Under the pieces are notes generated by a model. That model was given only the letters and a program-made list of their open reading frames with translations, had not been told where the DNA came from and did not search any database. A DNA stretch of 27,259 nucleotides, taken from Octopus sinensis (lineage: Eukaryota). A program made the translations under genes and the position numbers. The stretch is taken from contig NW_021833340.1 in the NCBI RefSeq assembly GCF_006345805.1, positions 1 to 27,259 of the forward strand, written 5' to 3'. The first letter of the stretch is position 1, and each line of letters begins with the position of its first letter. Of this stretch, positions 3,548-27,259 are shown piece after piece.

Positions 3548-3966
3548 GGCGACAAGCTGGCAGAAACGTTAGCACGCCGGGCAAAATGCTTAGCAGTACT
3601 TCGTCTTGTCTTTAAGTTCTGAGTTCAAATTCCGCCGAGGTCGACTTTGCCTTCCATCCTTTCGGGGTCGATAAATTGAGTACCAGTTACGCATTGGAGT
3701 CGATATAATCGACTAAATTCGTTTGTCTGTCCTTGTTTGGCCCCTCTGTGTTTAGCCCCTTGTGGGTAGTAAAGAAATAGGTATTTCGTCTTGTCTTTAC
3801 TTTCTGAGTTCAAATTCCGCCGAGGTCTACTTTGCCTTTCATCCTTTCGAGGTCGATAAATTAAGTACCAGTTACGCACTGGGGTCAATGTTATCGACTT
3901 AATCTCTTTGCCTGTCCTTCTTTGTCCCCTCTGTGTTTAGCCCCTTGTGGGCAATAAAGAAATAAG
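3548..3966 (+). mobile_element. SINE family B head-to-tail dimer (full unit plus 5'-truncated unit)
   Basis: 3548-3780 and 3780-3966 are near-identical direct repeats joined at AAATAG/GTATTTCGTC. Confidence 0.9.
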
Positions 3967-4080: not shown

Positions 4081-4424
4081 GATAAAATGACAAAATACGA
4101 TAGGATGTGATGAGGTGTGGTGTAGATTAGAATGCGTTGGTGCCGTACAGTTTGGTAGGATATTTTACTTCATTCCTTCAAATCAATTACCAAGTGTTCA
4201 TGCGAAGGAATTTCGGTAATTCCACTGAAATCAAGTAACTGGAGAACTGAGTAATTAATTTTAATTAACGTTGAATCTCCTTTTATTTCGTTTGGATAGG
4301 TTTTCTTTTCTTTCTTGTTTTGTTTTTTATTAATCTTATTTGGGATTTTGTTTCATTTCACTTCGTTTTTTTTTTTCTTTTCGGTGACTTCCGTTTTTTG
4401 GACTTGTGATTTATCTACCCCTAC

Positions 4425-4990
4425 ACCGCCACCACCACCACCACCACCAACAACACCAACACTCACAGCTACGAACACCACTACAACCACCACCACCACC
4501 ACCACCACCACCATCACCTCCCCCCACCCGCACTATAACTTTCAGCACTTTTAGTACCACCACCACCACCACCACCACCATCACAACCATTAATCAACTA
4601 CCACTACTAGCACTATCACAACCACCACCGCGAACACAACCATTGATACTACCACAACCACAGCCACCACCGCCACACTACCAATATCAACACCGCCAAC
4701 ACATGCTTTCCTTATTCACAAAACAGACCATTTACTATATCAACCACCACCACCACCACTACCACTGTCTCCACCACCACCACCAGTACATCCGTCACCA
4801 TCACACCAACGCCGCCACGTTTTATCGTTGTCTCTGTTTTCAATTTAGCACGTAACTACACTAGGTTTTTCGATGGCGGGTAGAAAGTAGAATAGAAGGT
4901 GTAACAAGTTTCCATGGTATTATTGATGTTGTTTTTTGTGGCTGTTGTGGTTGTTGTTGTTGGTGGTGGTGATGGTGGATCTGGTGATGG
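4425..4990. repeat. Cryptic (CAC/ACC)n tract followed by a (GTT/GGT)n tract
   Basis: Directly visible triplet low-complexity DNA. Confidence 0.9.
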
Positions 4991-8854: not shown

Positions 8855-9067
8855 GGCGGCAAGCTGGCAGAACCGTTAGCCCACCAGGCGATATGTTTAG
8901 CGGCATTTCGTATGTTTTTACGGTCTGCGTTCAAATTCCACCGAGGTTGACTTTGCCTTTTACCCTTTCGGGGTCGCTGAAAAAAGTACCAGTTGAGTAC
9001 TGGTGCCGATGTAATCGACTAGCCCACTCCCTTCCAAACTGTTGGCCTTGTTCCATAATTTCAGACC
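8855..9067 (+). mobile_element. SINE family B with probable 17-bp TSD
   Basis: GGCGGCAAGCTGGCAGAA head; flanks AATATGTCTAGTTTAAT (8835-8851) and AATATGACTAGTCTAAT (9068-9084). Confidence 0.9.
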
Positions 9068-9661: not shown

Positions 9662-9836
9662 GGTGCAGGTGTGGCTGTGTGGTAAGAAGCTTGCTTCCCA
9701 ACCACATGGTTCTGGGTTCAGTCCTACTGCACCTTGGGCAAAAGTGCCTTCTACTATAGCCACGGGCCGACCAAATGCTTGTGAGTGAATCTGGTAGTCG
9801 GAAGCTGAAAAATGCCCGTCTCTCTCTCTCTCTTTC

Positions 9837-9901
<65 letters not shown>

Positions 9902-10199
9902 ATGCATGCATGCATGTATGTATGTATGTATGTATGTATGTATGTATGTATGTATGTATGTATGTATGTATGTATGTGTATATTTATGCCTTTGTATCTG
10001 TGTTGCCACCCCTCCATCGCTTGACAACCGATGGTGGTGTGTTTACGTCCCTATAACTTAGAGGTTCGTCTAAAGAGACCGATAGAATAAGTACTTGCTT
10101 ACAAATAGTAAGTCCTGGGGTAGATTTCTTCAGCTAAAAAGCTTTAAGGCGGTGCCCCAGCATGGCGGCAGTCAAGTGGCTGAAATAAGTAAGAAAAAA
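9662..10199 (+). mobile_element. SINE family A, full length, with expanded internal (TA)(TG)(TATG) microsatellite
   Basis: Head GGTGCAGGTGTGGCTGTGTGGTAAG, B-box GGTTCAGTCC, CCTTGGGCAA box, tail AAGGCGGTGCCCCAGCATGG..CTGAAATAAGTAAG. Confidence 0.92.
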
Positions 10200-10869
10200 G
10201 ATGTGCAATTTTCTAAACGGCAACTACGAACCTGAACGTCAGACAACATGTATACATGCAGACAGACTCAATGACATAAACAAACAAACACACACACAGA
10301 TATGCACGCACGTGCTCGCCCTCATGCGCATGCAAATATGCATTAACCACTGTTTCTTAACCTATTTCTCTATATTTCCTCCCTTTTGCGAGTTTATCAA
10401 CCTGATTGGCTCCACCCATATGAAAAGATGAGATAAGATGAAGATAATCTTGCAAAGAACACCATTGCATGACGTTAACAGCTTTATATTAAAAGTAGTT
10501 ATCATTCAACATTCAACAGTCAACGTAACTATATTACGTAATATTTACAACTTTATATTGTCTTGGCAACAGTACGATTTATTACATAACATCAACAGCT
10601 TTATATTAAATTAACATTAGATTTGTTTAGAATCAACATTGGGGTGATGGGTGAAGTGCAATACGAATTGACCAAATAAGTGATAACGTTTTTTTTTCTT
10701 TTTCTTTTTTTTTGTCAGTTTAAAAAACAATTTCCCCATTGGAACCTTGAAAGATCTCCTAGGTTAAGACTTGCAGATATAATCTTATAGACAGACATTG
10801 ACACAAATAGATAAATATCCGCGCGCGCGCATGCGCACTCACGCAGTCTCACTCTTCCCATTTCTAACT

Positions 10870-11051: not shown

Positions 11052-11380
11052 ATAGATACATGCACCATCCATACATAAATGCATTCATACGCATAAAGAA
11101 ACACACAAACAGGCACAATGACTAATACACACACACACACAACGCAAAAACATACATACGCATAGAGTACACACATACACAAACTCTTTAATATATTCGC
11201 TTAAGCTCTCTCTCACGTGAATAAATGCACACAGTCTGAAACTTTCACACACAGACACACGCAGATGCAACCACACACACACGCACACACACATGCGAAA
11301 GCACACGCAGCACATGCATACACATGCACACAAACACAACAAACACACGCTCATACACGCATGCGCACACACTAAAATAC
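10870..11380. repeat. Degenerate (CA)n/(TG)n low-complexity tract
   Basis: Directly visible. Confidence 0.85.
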
Positions 11381-11459
11381 AAACTATGATGGAGGATTTC
11401 TTCGTCACAGGCTCACTCCCGCCGTACTTTCACCTTTTATGTCGTGTCCATTCTCATAT

Positions 11460-12770
11460 CATCAGCTCCACCTACACCACCACCACAACCATCACCACTA
11501 CAACACAACCACAACAACCACCATCACAAACACCACCACAACAACCACCACCTCCATCATCACCACCACCACCACCAGCAACACCACCAGCAACACCACC
11601 AGCAACACCACCATAAAAACCACCACCATCACCAACACCACGACCAGTATCATTACACAACCATCACCACCACCACAACCACCACCACCGCCGCCAGACC
11701 GTCCCTCACCAACTCTATGGCCATAAAGCAGCCGCACACTACCACCGCTACCTCCAACACCACAACCACTACCATCACCACCACTACCATCCCCTCCACT
11801 ATTACCAATACCACTAATACCACCGCCACCATCACCACTACAGCCACCATCACTACCACCTCAGTGCCACTTATCAACACCGACATGCAGTCTATTACTA
11901 ACATCACCATCACCATACTACATCTCACTAATACCATCATACTATCACCACCACCACCACAACCACCACCTCCACCACACCACACTCAATACCACTACCA
12001 GCGCTACAACCAACACCCCCCACGACATAATACCACCGCCACCAAGCACCAGCAACAACAAAACCATCACATTTACGACCATCGTCACCAAAGCCACCAT
12101 TGTCATGATATCCCGTCTCACCACCACGACCACTCGCCACCACCTCCACTACAACTTGATATAGCACTGCCCGCTCCCCCCTCGCCCATCCACACTCACA
12201 CCGACACTCTTTACACCGCCATTGTCAATACCACTAGCATCTCTTACCAACAACACAATCACCATCACTACCACCACCACCACCACCACCACCACTATCA
12301 CCGCTACCACCAACATTAGCACCAGTACCACCGCCGCCGCCACCGCCGCCACCAATGCCACTACATCTAACATCAGCAGCACCACTAACAACACCATCAG
12401 CAACACCTACATAGCCACCACAATCACCATTAACAACACCACCACCATCACCAATACCACCACCATCACTATACCACCACCACCACAACCACCAACATCA
12501 ACAGCACCACAAGCACTATCAACACCAACAACACCACCACCACCACCAAATACCACCACCATACCACCACCACCACCAACAACAGCAACAGCAACAACAA
12601 CAGCACCACAATCACTATCAACACCAACAACAACACCGCCACCAAATACCACCACCACCACTACCACGACTAACCCTCAATAATACTATTAACAATGACA
12701 ATATGAAACAACAGCTGCACTTGCCACAACAACAACATTAACTACTACTACTACTACTACTACTACTACT
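11460..12770. repeat. 1.3-kb cryptic (CAC/ACC/AAC)n tract ending in (ACT)n
   Basis: Directly visible; includes an internal duplication of AACAGCACCACAA.CACTATCAACACCAACAACA at ~12502 and ~12597. Confidence 0.9.
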
Positions 12771-14735: not shown

Positions 14736-15392
14736 CATTGAAAACATGACAGCGTTATAAGTTTATCTTTTTATCGTTATTTTTTTCATATTTACAAATG
14801 GGTTTCTTGCAGTTTGTTTCAAATAATAACGTTCTTGAATCCATCTCCAACGTTTCTAAACTTTCTCGGTCTCATTATCAGGAAGAACAGATGTTTATAT
14901 ATATATTACTGGACAAAGATGATTGGTGTAGACATCACACACCATTCATATTACTCTGTTGAAATTTGACGTCATCAGTCAGATGTTTATTTTTGTTTAT
15001 TACTGGCGTATGCTGTGTGCCAATTTTAGCATTGCACCGTGTTATGGATACTGCTTCCATTATTAACCTTTTATTTTTGAGAGAATGTACGTATAATATA
15101 GATGCATTGTCTACTAATGTTTTCGTAAGTGATTCTGTTTGCGTTATGTACTGTTGTAGTTCATTGCAATTGTACCTTGTGAATGCATACTAAGTCAGCA
15201 AGATTGTGTTGTACATATATGGTCAATATAACAGATGGAATCTGCAGTTTTACAGTTTTCATGTCTGCAATCAAGTATTGTTGGTCATTAGTGTCTTGTT
15301 GACTAAATTTACATCCGTTTGATTTGTTATATTTTACATGAAATTATAGCAATTATAAAGAAGTAGCAACTTATTCCAACATCATACATATC

Positions 15393-15613
15393 TATTTCTT
15401 TACTACCCACAAGGGGCTAAACACAGAGAGGACAAACAAGGACAGACAAATGGATTAAGTCGATTAGATCGACGCCAATGTGTAACTGGTACTTATTTAA
15501 TCGACCCCGAAAGGATGAAAGGCAAAATCGACCTCGGCGGAATTTGAACTCAGAACGTAGCGGCAGACGAAATACTGCTAAGCATTTCGCCCGGCGTGCT
15601 AACGTTTCTGCCA
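15393..15613 (-). mobile_element. SINE family B, slightly 5'-truncated
   Basis: Reverse complement of the 3548-3780 unit; CATATC on both sides (15387-15392, 15614-15619) is a possible TSD. Confidence 0.92.
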
Positions 15614-16488: not shown

Positions 16489-17695
16489 ATTACAAATTTG
16501 GAATTTTACCAATAGAACCGCAACTCCTATTTCAGGATAACCTTATTGTATAGAAAGTTATATCCCATAAAATAATATTAGCATTTAAAAAACATACTAT
16601 AATACAATAAAATTATTTGAAAAAAATATATGAGAACAATATATATAACTTACCCGTTATTAGTCTGTGGGCAAAGAAGGTATTTTTAATCAATGCTACA
16701 CGTGTTTCTGCGCTGATGGGGTATTTATCCAGGCTATACATAATACATAAATCCACCAGTGCGTCCTCAGGCTATTTATTTTATAGTTATTATTATTAAC
16801 GGATCAAAGTTAAAAATACATATTATAAGTCATATTAAATTTTTTAAATAAGAATATAAGTAAAACAATAATAAAAATATATAAATTACAAATTGGCCGT
16901 GTGTTAAGTAGCTTGCTAACCAACTACATGGTTACGGGTTCAGTCCCACTGCGTGGGATCTTGGGCAAGTGTCTTCTGCTATAGCCCCAGGCCGACCAAA
17001 GCCTTGTGAGTGGATTTAGTAGACGGAAACTGAAAGAAGCCTGTCGTTTATATGTGCATATATATATGTATATATATATATATATATATATGTGTTTGCG
17101 TGTCTGTGTTTGTCCTCCTAGCATTGCTTGACAACCGATGCTGGTGTGTTTACGTCCTCGTCACTTAGCGGTTCGGCAAAAGAGATCAATAGAATAAGTA
17201 CTGGGCTTACAAAGAATAAGTCCCGTGGTCGATTTGCTCGACTAAAGGCGGTGCTCCAGCATGGCCGCAGTCAAATGACTGAAACAAGCAAAAGAGAAAG
17301 AGAAAGAAAGATATTTTAAAAAATAAAAACAATGTCAAACAAGTATAAATTACCAATTTTTAATGTCAAACGTAAGTTAATAGTATTTAAAAAATTATTT
17401 AGTAAAATCCACTCTATACGTTATAAATTTATTGAATAAAACTAATTTTAAAAAATCTAATAAAAAATTTAACAAAAGAAGAATACTTATCGAGTTTACT
17501 CCTCGTTCCTGTGCAAATAGCTGCTCCCTCTGTCATACGCTAAGTATTATGGGAATAACTCTGAAAAATTCTCTTAGACTAATAATATTTGAGAGGTTGA
17601 ATTTTATTGGATATAACTTTCTATGTGTATTCCATACAATAGGTTATCCTGAATTAGGAGTTGCGGTTCTATTGGTAAAATCCCAAAATTGTAAT
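16489..17695. repeat. Inverted repeat pair, arms 16489-16573 and 17601-17695
   Basis: TTTTACCAATAGAACCGCAACTCCTA(T/A)TTCAGGATAACCT is present on opposite strands, with one 10-nt indel between arms. Confidence 0.85.
16894..17310 (+). mobile_element. SINE family A, near full length
   Basis: Same head, middle, (TA)n and tail as 9662-10199. Confidence 0.92.
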
Positions 17696-17940: not shown

Positions 17941-18407
17941 GGAAAAAAGCGGAGGGAGAATGACAAAAAAAAAAAGAAAAAGAAAAGCAGGTGCAGGAGT
18001 GGCTGTGTGGTAAGTGGCTTGCTTACCTTACTTGACAGAAGAGTTCACATTTGCATGCTACTTGGAAGTCACGTCTTTCGACGTGAAATATTGAACGTTT
18101 AAAGCCCGACTACAGGTAGGTGTTTGTTTTATGGGGGTGGGGGTAGTGGAGTTTTTGTTGTTCTGTTATTAATAATGTTTGTTGAGCAACAGTCTCCACT
18201 CAGCTCCAGACATTTGCCTGCCTGTAGTCGTGCGAAAAGTCTCACTTTGCAGTGAGAATTATGTTTTTGAGGAGGCGTATCCCCTCCGCAAAAATTTGTT
18301 GGCTGTGAAAATTGTCTTTACCATTTGTGGATTACCAGTTTGGATTAACAAAAAGTTCGCCGTCAAGGTAAGCGGTTTTGTTTTTTCGGAGCTGGGTGGA
18401 ATTGTTG

Positions 18408-18855
18408 GGTACTAGTATCGTAGAGTGGTCCCGGTTTGCGCACACGCGCAGACACGCGTCCGCGCTAGCCAGACGTAGGCAGTCGATCCTACGAGCTGAC
18501 TGGCGCATGCACGATATATACGATATATACTTGTATCGATATATACTTGTATCAATATATACTTGTATCGATATATACGTGTATACGATATATACTTGTA
18601 TATATACGATATGTACTTGTATATATACGATATATACTTGTATCGCACATCCCCGATTCGCGCACGAATCGGGGACGTGCGATACAAGTATATATCTTAT
18701 ATATACAAGTATATATCGTATACACGTATATATCGATACAAGTATATATCGTGCATACGCCAGTCAGCTCGTAGGATCGACTGCCTACATCTGGCTAGCA
18801 CGGACGCGCGTCTGCGCGTGTGCGTAAACCGGGACCACTCTACGATACTAGTACC
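18408..18855. mobile_element. Foldback-type MITE (Mutator-like), 448-bp palindrome with 9-bp TSD
   Basis: GGTACTAGTATCGTAGAGTGG...CCACTCTACGATACTAGTACC; GAATTGTTG at 18399-18407 and 18856-18864; the arms meet at a 4-nt loop at 18661-18664. Confidence 0.9.
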
Positions 18856-19333
18856 GAATTGTTGTGTGTTTTATTTTTATTACAGTATATTCTGCCCAGC
18901 TCTGGGGCATTTTCGCTTACTCTTGGCGGTGTTGTGATTGTGCTTGTTAACAAGCAAGTGAAGAACTTCAATGTGAATATTTTCACTACAGTTATTTAGG
19001 AAAAAAGTTGGTGCTTGCAAGCTGTGCGTAGTTTTGAACCCGGAAACGTTGGAAGTACTTTACCAGAAGGATTATCAAGAGATTTGAAGGCTGCAAGATT
19101 TGAGTACCGTGTAGCTCAAAAATGTTATTTCTGCCGTGGAGAATTGTACAATATTTATTTATTTTGCTGAACTGCTGTCTTTTCTTTCCTTTAGCTGAAC
19201 AATTTTAGTTGGACTAGTATTTTTTTTCTTCCAATTTTAGTTGAACTGTGTTTTTATTTTTATTGTGTTCAAAGACTTTTTGTTGTTTTTGGTTGAGTGA
19301 CTTTTTTCCTTGTTTGAACTGTGTTTTATCTAC

Positions 19334-20412
19334 ATGGCAGATAAAATGATAAAAATAAGACCACTGCTTTGGAGTGGGAGATTGTCCCAACCAAGCAGTG
19401 GTTAAAAGATATGGAGGAGAAGACGGTGGTGGTAAGAACTTACTCTATAGTTCTTGATACCAAAGAACTAAAAGACTATTTGTCCCATGTAAAATATACA
19501 TCCCAGGGTGTCAGGCATGCAACGGTGTGGTTGCTGTTTAACATCACGGAAGAGGCTTGCAATTTTGCAAGTCAGCCTTTGGAGGGAAAGGAAATTGTGT
19601 TCCTCCCGTCGTGGGGATGGCTGGCTCCAGGTATCCAATGATTATGGAGGGTCGCCCCCACCCCCAAGTGTCACTCGTGCCGGGAGTCAGGCCATGTCAA
19701 GAAGGACTGCCCCCGGGGTCGTGGTAAGGATCCGGAGCAGGAAAAGGGGAAGGTGCCCTCCTCTCTCCCATTGCAGGGAGAAACAGAGGAAGACGTTGAG
19801 GTGTCGAACTCAACGAGAAGGAAGAAAAAGGTAAGCAACGGTGGTTGCTCACCAGGAGACGTGCAGGTTGGGGGAGAGGAAGAGGGGTCTTCTGATGTGC
19901 CGACGGACGCCTCGACTCCCGCAACCGAAAGAAGAAGAAAAAAGAGGAAGAAGAAAAACGGGAGACGGTCAGCGGATGACGCTGTGCCGCCGACCGAACC
20001 CGATGTTCCTCCGGTGGGAAGTGTGCCACCGGAGCGAGAGGCTCTGTCAGTGGGAATTGTGCCACTGACAGAGCAGGATGAGACCTCTCTCTGTGAGGAA
20101 GAGGTTGTCATTTTCTATCTCAAGGGAGGGCTTGTTGAGTTATACTTGGACAGTCTACTAGACCGAAAGCGATATAACTCGACCTGTATAGACTGTCCAA
20201 GTTGACTTCTTCAGGTGGCTGCCGAGGTCATAAATCAGAAAGAACTGATTGAGGTCAAGAAAACCTGTAACAATAAGATTTTGTTTCCCTCGGTCCGGGT
20301 CTGCCGATGCAGGCTTCCTTGCATGCGGCAGAAAACTTACTTGGGAGCCCGGATGAGGAAGACGAAGAATAATGAAAACTATATTCTTGTAATTTGTAAT
20401 TTGAATTTTTGA
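19334..20412 (+). pseudogene. Decayed L1/Tx1-type ORF1-like protein (RRM-like N-terminus, CCHC zinc knuckle, basic clusters, Cys-containing C-terminus)
   Basis: ATG 19334 MADK / frameshift / NDKNKTTALEWEIVPTK..FLPSW; MAGSRYPMIMEGRP (19617-) / frameshift / KCHSCRESGHVKKDCP (CX2CX4HX4C at 19669-19710). That frame stays open to TGA 20203 and again to 20412. Confidence 0.8.
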
Positions 20413-20746
20413 GATTATAATTTTGATTTATATTCATTTAAATTGAACAGTGATTTCGAGGGGTTATCGGTCGGCGGGCGCCGGTGCCCCTCCCAGTATT
20501 ATTATTTTTTTTCCATCTTTGTCGTTTTCATACACATTAATGTCTCTGTCCAGCCCGCAGCCAACTTTATCTCTGTACGACCTTCATGGTCAATTCGATG
20601 AGATAAAGTAGCTTGCTTACCAACCACATGGTTCCGGGTTCAGTCCCACTGCGTGGCACCTTGGGCAAGTGTCTTCTACTATACCTTCGGGCCGACAAAA
20701 GCCTTGTGAGTGAATTTGGTAGACGGAAACTGAAAGAAGCCTGTCG

Positions 20747-20762
<16 letters not shown>

Positions 20763-20778
<16 letters not shown>

Positions 20779-20882
20779 GACCGACTAGGCTATCAGATAT
20801 TGCTACACATCGCTGGTCACAATGCGCTTCACATTGTTTTAGCCTTCAAATAACGCCACCCCGCTGGCTAAGCAAGCAGGCC
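20763..20882 (-). mobile_element. 5'-truncated retroposon 3' end with A16 tail, inserted in the (TA)n of the split SINE
   Basis: Minus strand GGCCTGCTTGCTTAGCCAGCGGGGTGGCG..GTCGGTC-A16, flanked by (TA)n on both sides; this segment is absent from the other family-A copies. Confidence 0.75.
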
Positions 20883-20906
20883 ATATATATATATGTGTGT
20901 GGTGTG

Positions 20907-20963
<57 letters not shown>

Positions 20964-21652
20964 TTGTGTGTCTGTGTTTGTCTCCCCACCATTGCTTGAC
21001 AACCGATGCTGGTGTGTTTACGTCCCCGTAACTTAGCGGTTCGGCGAAAGAGACCGATAGAATAAGTACTAGGATTACAAAGAATAAGCCCTTATGTCGA
21101 TTTGATTCGACTAAAGGCGGTGCTCCAGCATGGCCGCAGTCAAATGACTGAAACAAGTAAAAGAAAAATAAAAGAAAAGAAAGAAAAATGTGTAAAGATT
21201 AAAGGTTCAACATGATGAAATATGTATGTGTCTGTGTGTGTGCGCGCGTGCGTAAACTTACATATACATACATAAATATTAACAAGGAGAATGGAGTGAG
21301 CAACTAGTTTTATTGCATAAATCTATAATTGTTTCATCGATTTCATTTTTGCATCTGGTTTGTTAGCTGACATTTCATCTATGATTTACCAGAAGTTCAT
21401 TGTCGTAATATGATTATATATTATATGAAACAGTACATTGAGCAATACTGGAAAATATCCGCTCTTCCAGGTCTATGTATAAATCAAAGTGCTGAATGGA
21501 CCCCAATTTCACAAAAGTATATATACATCTTGTTGAAGATGTTCATACCATCTCATTATCAAACTGTTATTTTGTATCAAAAAGACAAATGCACAATAAA
21601 CCACAGGTTCAAAGAGAATAAGGAGAAAACAAATAAACAAATAAAAAAGTAA

Positions 21653-25425: not shown

Positions 25426-25472
<47 letters not shown>

Positions 25473-25489
25473 CATACATACACAACACA

Positions 25490-25633
25490 CGGCCTTCTTT
25501 CAGTTTCCGTCTACCACATCCACTCACAAGGATAGTAGAAGACGCTTTCCCAAGGGGCAATGCAGAGTAGGACAGAACCCGGAGCCATGTGGTTGAGAAG
25601 CAAGCGTCCTACCATACAGCCATGTCTGCGCCT
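25490..25633 (-). mobile_element. SINE family A 5' half, with internal deletion
   Basis: Reverse complement of GGCGCAGACATGGCTGTATGGTAGG..GGCTCCGGGTTCTGTCC..GGTAGACGGAAACTGAAAGAAG. Confidence 0.8.
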
Positions 25634-26020
25634 ATACACACACACACACGCACACAAACACACACACACACACACATATAAATATATATATATATATATA
25701 TATGAATGAAGAAAATGGTAAAAATTAACGTACAGACATTATTCATTTAAAGACTTTCAAATTCATGCAGAGAAATTCCTGCTTACACCTGTTTCCACAC
25801 CTATTCAATTCAATTACAGAAATAAAATTCAAATTCCTAGTCAAGCGGACGTGTTTTTTCTATCTTTATTGTTTTCACTATTTTCTTCTAGTTCAGGGAG
25901 AATTTCCTAAAGGAATTCACATTTCAACGTGGACGAAAGGTGTGTGAAAGCCCCTTGTTTATACACACACACACACATACACACACATATAGTAATAATA
26001 ATAATACCTTCTACTATATA

Positions 26021-27009: not shown

Positions 27010-27259
27010 TGGATTGGCGCAGTATGGTAAGAAGCTTGCTCCCAACCACATGATTCCGGGTTCAGTCCCACTGCATGGCACTTTCGGTAAGATGTCTACT
27101 GTAGCTTCTGACCGACCAAAGCCCTGTGACTGGAGTTGGTAGGCGGAAACTGAAAGAAGCCCTTCGTATATATATATGTTTGTTTGTGTGTGTGTGTTAT
27201 TTGTTCTGTGTGCTTGTTCCCCGTTTGACAACCGGTGTCGGTATGTTTATGTCCCCGTA
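27010..27259 (+). mobile_element. SINE family A, cut by the window end
   Basis: TGGTAAGAAGCTTGCTCCCAACCACATGATTCCGGGTTCAGTCCCACTGC..GACAACCGGTGTCGG. Confidence 0.9.

What the first reader, a model, noticed from the sequence alone, without database searches (positions are those of the whole stretch)
18399..18864. Young foldback palindrome with modular arms and a perfect 9-bp TSD
Seen: the whole 448 bp folds on itself around TTCG-CGCA-CGAA. The outer ~114 bp differ at only 5 positions, all transitions, three of them at CpG. The inner arms are tandem variants of GATATATACTTGTAT(C), with more units on the left (arms 253 vs 191 bp). Established: long modular TIRs with inner tandem repeats and ~9-bp TSDs characterise Foldback/Mutator-type elements, and coleoid cephalopods have extensive ADAR editing of dsRNA. 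Inference: any read-through gives a ~190-bp duplex. Most mismatches are A:C on the plus strand, a favoured ADAR context, so it could be an editing or siRNA hot spot and could block the host element's expression or splicing.
Basis: partly seen in the sequence, partly recalled or inferred. Interest (0 to 1): 0.7.

Follow-up and report, generated by a model that had tools for sequence, protein, structure and literature searches.

The report
Foldback-type mini transposon in octopus DNA
A 448-bp, almost perfectly self-complementary piece of DNA flanked by a 9-bp duplication is a small non-autonomous "foldback" cut-and-paste transposon inserted upstream of a decayed gag-like pseudogene in an octopus genome: a real but ordinary kind of repeat.

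Summary
The element spans 18408-18855 (448 bp) and has arms of 253 and 191 nt around a CGCA loop. The outer 114 nt differ at 5 positions, all transitions, 3 of them at CpG. The inner arms are 16/21-bp tandem units, 7 on the left and 4 on the right. A perfect 9-bp direct repeat, GAATTGTTG, abuts both ends.

It is best read as a non-autonomous foldback-type DNA transposon of MITE size. The superfamily is not settled. A 9-bp duplication fits Mutator/Phantom (classical Foldback). However, 8-9-bp duplications, long inverted repeats and a conserved terminal 5'-GG also define Merlin, which is unusually abundant in Octopus.

The "host element" is a frameshifted, internally deleted gag-like (CCHC) pseudogene. 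Its one clear relative, Octopus sinensis LOC115225585, shares the upstream leader but lacks the palindrome. It also lacks the roughly 470 bp around it, so there is no clean empty site.

No second copy could be retrieved, because no cephalopod DNA collection was searchable. Copy number, consistency of the duplication length and the autonomous partner are therefore untested. "Young" is weakly based: arm divergence is about 4%, and octopus transposons are largely unmethylated. The ADAR/siRNA idea is plausible but untested. Unrelated palindromic hairpin elements are common in the fetched octopus loci.

The parts
18399..18407 (.). Left copy of the 9-bp target-site duplication GAATTGTTG
   Evidence: (D4). 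It is identical to 18856-18864 and abuts the inverted-repeat end. Chance probability is about 6e-6.
18408..18855 (.). Whole foldback element, 448 bp, with no unique middle domain and no coding capacity
   Evidence: Fold z-scores are -35 to -42. Six-frame arm peptides have no relatives among 5.8 billion proteins.
18408..18513 (+). Left outer arm: unique, GC-rich (62%) and CpG-rich, with terminus GGTACTAGTATCG
   Evidence: It has 5 transition differences from the right outer arm.
18514..18645 (+). Left inner arm: 7 tandem units of CGATATATACTTGTAT (16-21 bp)
   Evidence: TRF periods 16 and 21, unit parse and motif count of 11 against 0.08 expected.
18646..18679 (.). Central GC-rich hairpin core CACATCCCCGATTCG-CGCA-CGAATCGGGGACGTG (loop 18661-18664)
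18680..18749 (-). Right inner arm: 4 tandem units of the same motif in inverted orientation. It is 62 nt shorter than the left inner arm.
18750..18855 (-). Right outer arm, ending ...CGATACTAGTACC
   Evidence: (I1).
18856..18864 (.). Right copy of the 9-bp target-site duplication GAATTGTTG
18114..18293 (+). Upstream leader of the host gag-like unit, homologous to O. sinensis L001 9585-9761. This is context, not part of the transposon.
   Evidence: blastn gives 69-76% identity, E 1e-19.
19334..20205 (+). Host: decayed gag-like pseudogene with an intact CCHC zinc knuckle at about 19669-19713. This is context, about 480 bp downstream of the insertion.
   Evidence: Pfam zf-CCHC, E 2.6e-4. Relative P0001 = LOC115225585 of O. 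sinensis. tblastn shows frame changes and a deletion of about 60 aa.

Best explanation
The element is a non-autonomous, foldback-type cut-and-paste DNA transposon of MITE size.

Shown directly:
- It is a discrete 448-bp palindrome whose ends are exact inverted repeats.
- It is bounded by a perfect 9-bp duplication of the target.
- It sits in sequence of quite different composition.
- It has no coding capacity.
- It is absent from the only retrievable paralogue of the surrounding unit.

Inferred:
- It was inserted by a DDE transposase supplied in trans that makes 9-bp staggered cuts. The enzyme would be either a Mutator/Phantom (MULE) enzyme, as for classical Foldback elements, or a Merlin (IS1595-like) enzyme. 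I rate the two about equally likely.
- The 106-bp outer arms carry the cleavage and recognition ends.
- The 16/21-bp sub-repeats are probably reiterated transposase-binding sites. Their number drifts by slippage or unequal exchange, which makes the arms unequal.
- The hairpin-forming capacity of any transcript, and any resulting ADAR editing or small RNAs, is a by-product rather than a selected function.
For: - Anatomy and TSD.
- Improbability of the TSD and of the fold.
- Composition contrast: the arms are 59-62% GC with CpG o/e 2.06, against 38% GC and 0.81 for the window.
- No protein relatives for any frame of the arms, and no Rfam family at gathering score.
- The paralogous unit in O. sinensis (L001) shares the leader and ORF but has no palindrome.
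- Literature match to the foldback class. Tm1 has composite TIRs made of 13-15-bp tandem repeats, unequal arms, 9-bp TSDs, MITE-like members and a Phantom/MULE transposase (PMC3169594). Tetris has a flanking domain followed by tandem repeats inside the TIRs and 8-10-bp TSDs (PMC4079207).
- Literature match to Merlin: TIRs of 24-462 bp, terminal 5'-GG and 8-9-bp TSDs, with 191 transposase hits in O. bimaculoides (PMC8101967). Both MULE and Merlin are present in cephalopods (PMC10294476).
Against: - Only one copy was seen. Neither the window nor 67 kb of O. sinensis DNA holds another, and no cephalopod genome could be searched. Repetitiveness, a defining feature of a transposon family, is therefore untested.
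- TSD length rests on a single insertion.
- No autonomous partner was identified.
- The paralogue lacks about 470 bp around the insertion site as well, so no clean empty site was obtained.
- Unlike Drosophila FB and Tm1, the tandem repeats lie internal to a long unique outer domain rather than near the tips.
Confidence: 0.78

Rival explanations
1. The palindrome is, or has become, a functional hairpin-RNA locus. A transcript through it would fold into a duplex of about 190 bp. That duplex would be processed into endo-siRNAs or miRNA-like RNAs, or hyper-edited by ADAR, and this would affect the neighbouring gag-like family. This is compatible with a transposon origin.
For: - The hairpin is extremely stable on both strands.
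- On the - strand, 5 of 6 arm mismatches are G:U wobbles, so that hairpin is nearly perfect.
- Octopus shows the strongest hyper-editing signal and exceptionally many loci able to form long dsRNA. In frog, a palindromic repeat is heavily edited on its own (PMC5625713).
- There are sub-threshold Rfam hits to long-hairpin miRNA precursors, e.g. MIR810 at 103 bits against a gathering score of 170.
Against: - There is no evidence that the locus is transcribed.
- All Rfam hits are far below gathering score and are to unrelated plant or mammalian hairpins, so they reflect generic hairpin shape.
- The 5:1 split of G:U against A:C between strands is not significant (two-sided binomial about 0.2).
- There is no conservation evidence.
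- The neighbouring gene copy is already a pseudogene.
Confidence: 0.1
2. The palindrome is not mobile. It arose in place by a fold-back repair or replication event (an inverted duplication), or it is an assembly artefact from a chimeric palindromic read.
For: - Only one copy was seen.
- L002 contains inverted duplications that are 100% identical (1296-2237). Artefactual or very recent local palindromes may therefore exist in octopus assemblies.
Against: - A local fold-back event or a chimeric read would duplicate the flanking genomic sequence. Here the arms are unrelated to the flanks in sequence and composition.
- The arms are bounded by a perfect 9-bp direct repeat.
- The arms differ by 7 substitutions and by 62 nt in repeat number. 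An artefact or a fresh inverted duplication would not show that.
Confidence: 0.04
3. The palindrome is a constitutive part of the surrounding repeated gag-like unit (the 'host element'), not a separate insertion.
For: - The surrounding unit is itself a dispersed family, with copies in the window, L001 and L002.
- The paralogue lacks the whole 18294-19220 interval, not only the palindrome. A longer version of the unit that contains the palindrome cannot be strictly excluded.
Against: - The perfect 9-bp duplication sits exactly at the inverted-repeat ends.
- Arm identity is about 96%, against 69-76% between the host paralogues' leaders. The palindrome is therefore much younger than the host duplication.
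- It is absent from L001 and L002.
Confidence: 0.05

Closest known systems
Foldback elements of the Mutator/Phantom lineage (Drosophila FB; Tm1 of Meloidogyne, PMC3169594; Tetris of D. virilis, PMC4079207)
   Same: - Nearly the whole element is inverted repeat.
- The TIRs are composite, with short tandem sub-repeats whose number differs between the arms.
- The TSD is 9 bp.
- Non-coding MITE-like members exist.
- As in Tetris, a unique flanking domain lies outside the tandem-repeat domain.
   Different: - There is no middle domain at all, only a 4-nt loop.
- The sub-repeats are internal to a 106-bp unique GC-rich end rather than starting a few bases from the tip as in Tm1 and FB.
- There is no sequence similarity to these elements.
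- No MULE/FLYWCH transposase partner has been shown.
- The host is a cephalopod. No paper in the library combines 'foldback', 'transposable element' and 'octopus'.
Merlin / IS1016-like DNA transposons and their non-autonomous derivatives (PMC8101967)
   Same: - The TSD is 8-9 bp.
- The terminal 5'-GG-3' is conserved.
- TIRs can reach 462 bp.
- The superfamily is exceptionally abundant in Octopus bimaculoides and nearly cephalopod-restricted among molluscs (PMC10294476).
   Different: - Foldback architecture with reiterated sub-repeats is not a described hallmark of Merlin.
- No DDE_Tnp_IS1595 partner with GGTACTAGTATCG ends has been shown.
Galileo (P superfamily) long-TIR foldback-like elements of Drosophila (PMC3688188, PMC3573991)
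   Same: The TIRs are long and internally repetitive, and the repeats are multiple transposase (THAP) binding sites. This is the model for the inferred role of the 16/21-bp units.
   Different: Galileo makes 7-bp TSDs, whereas this element has 9 bp, so membership is excluded.
Palindromic MITEs that act as self-contained ADAR substrates (e.g. the Harbinger-derived palindromic repeat of Xenopus, PMC5625713)
   Same: A single copy can form a long dsRNA without a nearby inverted partner.
   Different: Harbinger TSDs are 3 bp, and editing of this element has not been examined.

Membership tests
Foldback-type element (structural class) | Long inverted repeats make up most or all of the element | tested here: met
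   Arms of 253 and 191 nt within 448 bp, with a 4-nt loop.
Foldback-type element (structural class) | Composite TIRs with short tandem sub-repeats whose number differs between the arms | tested here: met
   Units of 16/21 bp, 7 on the left and 4 on the right. Compare Tm1.
Foldback-type element (structural class) | Dispersed multi-copy family with independent flanks | not testable with these tools
   No cephalopod DNA collection is available. There were 0 hits in the window, L001, L002 and the metagenome, viral and prokaryote collections.
Mutator / Phantom (MULE) superfamily | TSD of 8-10 bp, mostly 9 bp | tested here: met
   Perfect 9-bp GAATTGTTG, from a single insertion only.
Mutator / Phantom (MULE) superfamily | Autonomous relative with the same termini that encodes a MULE (with or without FLYWCH) transposase | not testable with these tools
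Merlin superfamily | TSD of 8 or 9 bp | tested here: met
   9 bp. Criterion taken from PMC8101967.
Merlin superfamily | Conserved terminal 5'-GG-3' in the TIRs | tested here: met
   Termini are GGTACTAG... and ...CTAGTACC. Criterion taken from PMC8101967.
Merlin superfamily | Autonomous relative encoding a DDE_Tnp_IS1595 transposase with matching TIRs | not testable with these tools
MITE (generic) | Small (<800 bp), non-coding, with TIRs and a TSD | tested here: met
   448 bp. It contains only mirror-image spurious ORFs with no relatives. TIRs and TSD are shown.
MITE (generic) | High copy number | not testable with these tools
   Same limitation as for the dispersed-family test above.
P superfamily (Galileo-like foldback) | TSD of 7-8 bp | tested here: not met
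   The TSD is 9 bp.
hAT superfamily | TSD of 8 bp (criterion from established knowledge of the superfamily) | tested here: not met
   The direct repeat is 9 bp. An 8-bp parse would break the symmetry of the ends.
Known miRNA / hairpin RNA families (Rfam) | Score at or above the family gathering threshold | tested here: not met
   No hit at gathering score. The best sub-threshold hit is MIR810 at 103 bits against 170.

The most novel reading that the evidence does not exclude
This could be the founding copy of an undescribed cephalopod foldback family, derived from Merlin or Phantom. Each copy would be a self-contained dsRNA of about 190 bp. Such families would contribute materially to the exceptional dsRNA load and hyper-editing or small-RNA output of octopus transcriptomes. 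A Merlin-derived foldback would also be a new architecture for that superfamily.
Probability: 0.12. Interest if true: 0.45.

Novelty: new member of a known kind. Interest (0 to 1): 0.2.

Why it matters
Taken alone, this is one more small DNA transposon in a genome that is about half repeats. It has modest value in three ways.

1. Foldback-type elements have not been described in cephalopods in the searched literature.
2. Its termini (GG) and 9-bp duplication give a concrete handle for asking whether the unusually abundant octopus Merlin transposases, or MULE/Phantom enzymes, mobilise hairpin elements.
3. Single-copy palindromes of this kind are candidate contributors to the very high abundance of dsRNA and ADAR hyper-editing reported for octopus.

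None of these would overturn current understanding.

Tried and rejected
1. I concatenated the six reading frames of both outer arms and searched 5.8 billion proteins, hoping to catch spurious ORF calls on other copies. There were no hits.
2. I scanned the metagenome, viral and prokaryotic genome collections for exact 24- and 26-mers from the arms. All returned 0, as expected for an animal repeat.
3. I looked up five window ORFs with the look-up of encoding contigs to reach the source contig or alleles. None is on record.
4. A word-indexed protein search with the host ORF found nothing. The exhaustive HMMER search found two relatives, which yielded loci L001 and L002 from O. sinensis.
5. I tried to read a clean empty site in L001. 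A tempting match, GGGTGGCCAGAATTGTGT, aligns better to window 19136-19149 than to the insertion site. I therefore rejected it as an empty site.
I did not attempt it by any other route.
7. I tested CpG decay as a sign of youth or methylation and rejected it. The enrichment is not significant, and octopus transposons are unmethylated.
8. Rfam, tRNA and miRNA identity was rejected.
9. An introner-like reading was rejected. The strong splice-like sites at 18368 and 18885 lie outside the duplication, so the element did not bring them.
10. The Phantom paper (PMC2927773) is not held in the library.

Full report
**Observation.**
- The sequence and the repeat finder show a 448-bp element at 18408-18855. 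Its ends, GGTACTAGTATCG... and ...CGATACTAGTACC, are exact inverted repeats.
- A perfect 9-bp direct repeat GAATTGTTG (18399-18407 and 18856-18864) abuts both ends.
- The axis is TTCG-CGCA-CGAA at 18657-18668, which gives arms of 253 and 191 nt.
- An ungapped comparison of the outer 114 nt finds 5 differences. All are transitions, and three are at CpG.
- The inner arms are tandem units of CGATATATACTTGTAT. The period is 16 bp, with a 21-bp variant carrying an extra ATATA. There are seven units on the left and four on the right. The two alignment gaps (41 nt and about 20 nt) correspond to whole units.
- As RNA the element folds at -364 kcal/mol (z = -35) on the + strand and -371 kcal/mol (z = -42) on the - strand. 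As DNA the fold has z = -36.
- The chance of a 9/9 flank match is about 6e-6 from base composition. Empirically, only one other position in the window shows it at this spacing.
On the + strand RNA there are five A:C mismatches and one G:U. On the - strand the same sites give five G:U and one A:C.

**Setting.** The window is animal DNA.
- It is 38% GC and dense in microsatellites and SINE-like repeats. No Rfam family or tRNA was found.
- The element is the most CpG-dense segment of comparable size in its neighbourhood: 45 CpG in 448 bp, o/e 2.06, against 0.81 for the rest of the window. Its outer arms are 59-62% GC. It is therefore compositionally foreign to its flanks.

**The host unit.**
- About 480 bp downstream lies a reading frame with an RRM-like segment and an intact CCHC zinc knuckle (Pfam PF00098).
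- A word-indexed search found nothing. An exhaustive HMMER search of 1.84 billion representatives found two relatives.
- The clear one is P0001, a 281-aa protein annotated as 'uncharacterized protein LOC115225585 [Octopus sinensis]'. This identifies the source as an octopus or a close relative.
- tblastn of P0001 on the window shows that the window copy is a pseudogene. The ATG at 19334 is out of frame with the homologous region, about 60 residues are deleted, and the frame changes twice.

**Is the palindrome part of the host unit?**
- I fetched the O. sinensis locus of P0001 (L001) and that of the weaker relative (L002).
- L001 shares the ORF with the window. It also shares an upstream leader: window 18114-18293 matches L001 9585-9761 at 69-76% identity. 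The surrounding unit is therefore a dispersed family.
- L001 has no palindrome. Between the shared leader and the shared T-rich stretch before the ATG, L001 has about 150 bp where the window has about 930 bp.
- Neither locus has any match to the outer arms. The only hits are to TA-rich microsatellites.
- So the palindrome is not a fixed part of this family. Its arms are about 96% identical, far more alike than the host paralogues are to each other.
- This is not a clean empty site, because about 470 bp flanking the insertion are also absent or unalignable in L001. A tempting match of L001 to the joined flanks aligns better elsewhere in the window, and I rejected it.

**What it is.** A discrete, non-coding palindrome with a compositional contrast to its flanks, exact inverted ends and a perfect 9-bp duplication is best explained as a non-autonomous cut-and-paste DNA transposon of the foldback structural class.
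- The literature gives close structural parallels. Tm1 of root-knot nematodes has composite TIRs built from 13-15-bp tandem repeats, arms of different length, 9-bp duplications, MITE-like members and a Phantom/MULE transposase (PMC3169594). Tetris of Drosophila virilis has a unique flanking domain followed by tandem repeats inside the TIRs, and 8-10-bp duplications (PMC4079207).
- By analogy with Galileo, whose long TIRs hold multiple transposase-binding sites (PMC3688188), the 16/21-bp units are probably reiterated binding sites. Their number would change by slippage. This step is inference.

**Superfamily.**
- Merlin elements are defined by 8-9-bp duplications, TIRs of 24-462 bp and a conserved terminal 5'-GG-3' (PMC8101967). 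This element begins with GG.
- The same study found Merlin transposases to be most abundant among protostomes in Octopus bimaculoides, with 191 sequences.
- A mollusc-wide survey found Merlin almost restricted to cephalopods, while MULEs occur in all molluscs (PMC10294476).
- I therefore regard Mutator/Phantom and Merlin as about equally likely.
- P/Galileo (7-bp duplication) is excluded by the duplication length, and so is hAT (8 bp, from established knowledge of that superfamily).
- The decisive test is to find a longer copy with the same ends that encodes a transposase. I could not run it. I did not pursue it by another route.

**Age.** The arm divergence is 3.8% over all aligned positions and 4.6% over the outer arms (K2P).
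- If the inserted copy was a perfect palindrome, each arm has changed by about 2%. That is recent relative to the host paralogues but not demonstrably 'young'.
- Foldback TIRs within one element average only 93% identity in Tm1, so some of the divergence may pre-date insertion.
- The CpG argument is weak. CpG positions make up 26% of the arms, so three of five mismatches at CpG is unremarkable (P = 0.12).
- Fewer than 10% of octopus CpGs are methylated, and transposons are essentially unmethylated (PMC9476566). That also explains why the element keeps so many CpGs.

**Consequences.**
- A transcript through the element on either strand would form a duplex of about 190 bp.
- Octopus has the strongest hyper-editing signal among the 19 species surveyed and an exceptionally high fraction of loci able to form long dsRNA. 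In frog, a palindromic repeat is edited without needing an inverted partner (PMC5625713).
However, nothing in the sequence shows transcription, and the strand asymmetry of wobble against mismatch pairs (5:1) is not significant.
- The suggested effect on the host element is moot, because this host copy is already broken.
- Sub-threshold Rfam hits to long-hairpin miRNA precursors reflect hairpin shape only.

**How ordinary is it?** L001 alone carries three other near-perfect palindromic hairpin elements of unrelated sequence within 1.3 kb, each next to a (TA)n tract. L002 has inverted duplications at 100% identity. Palindromic MITE-like elements are evidently common in octopus DNA. What sets this one apart is its 9-bp duplication, GC-rich unique ends and inner tandem array.

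**Verdict.** This is a real feature, correctly described, and a new member of a known kind. Its superfamily and copy number are unresolved for lack of cephalopod genome access, and its interest is low to moderate.

Noticed in passing
window 19334-20205 (+); L001 10001-10846: A gag-like unit (RRM-like segment plus CCHC zinc knuckle) belongs to an octopus-restricted low-copy family. Only two relatives exist among 1.84 billion representatives. One of them, Octopus sinensis LOC115225585, has a degenerate knuckle. The window copy keeps an intact knuckle but is frameshifted and has lost about 60 aa.
   Followed up: partly
window 18365-18373 and 18866-18886: The insertion sits between a strong 5' splice-like site (CAAG|GTAAGC at 18367/18368) and a strong 3' splice-like site (TTTTATTTTTATTACAG| ending at 18885). 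Without the element this would be an intron-like interval of about 61 bp. The sites lie outside the duplication, so the element did not bring them. Whether the interval is a real intron is unknown.
   Followed up: no
L001 6920-7171, 7327-7545, 7839-8175: Three unrelated near-perfect palindromic hairpin elements lie within 1.3 kb of O. sinensis DNA. Their arms are 90, 103 and 168 nt at 97-100% identity, with loops of 72, 13 and 1 nt. Each is adjacent to a (TA)n tract, which suggests TA-targeting hairpin MITEs.
   Followed up: partly
L002 1296-2237: A complex inverted duplication has arms of 160-201 nt at 100% identity. It is either a very recent rearrangement or an assembly artefact.
   Followed up: no
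window 16894-17309 and 20606-21177; also 2521-2696, 9672-10201, 25433-25635, 27019-27185: Copies of one SINE-like repeat, each with an internal microsatellite, bracket the host region in direct orientation at 88-89% identity. They are probably just abundant SINEs rather than boundaries of a larger element.
   Followed up: no
window 3596-3964: A head-to-tail dimer of a 185-bp SINE-like unit at 89% identity. Further copies lie at 15388-15613 and 8855-9021.
   Followed up: no
window 18000-18024 and L001 9463-9487: A 25-nt SINE-like fragment, GGCTGTGTGGTAAGT.GCTTGCTT, is 96% identical and lies at a similar distance upstream of the leader in both host paralogues. The duplicated host unit therefore extends at least this far upstream.
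   Followed up: no
window 4424-4785 and 11246-12770: Long, imperfect CAC/ACC-type trinucleotide arrays create spurious His/Thr/Pro-rich ORFs of up to 291 aa.
   Followed up: no
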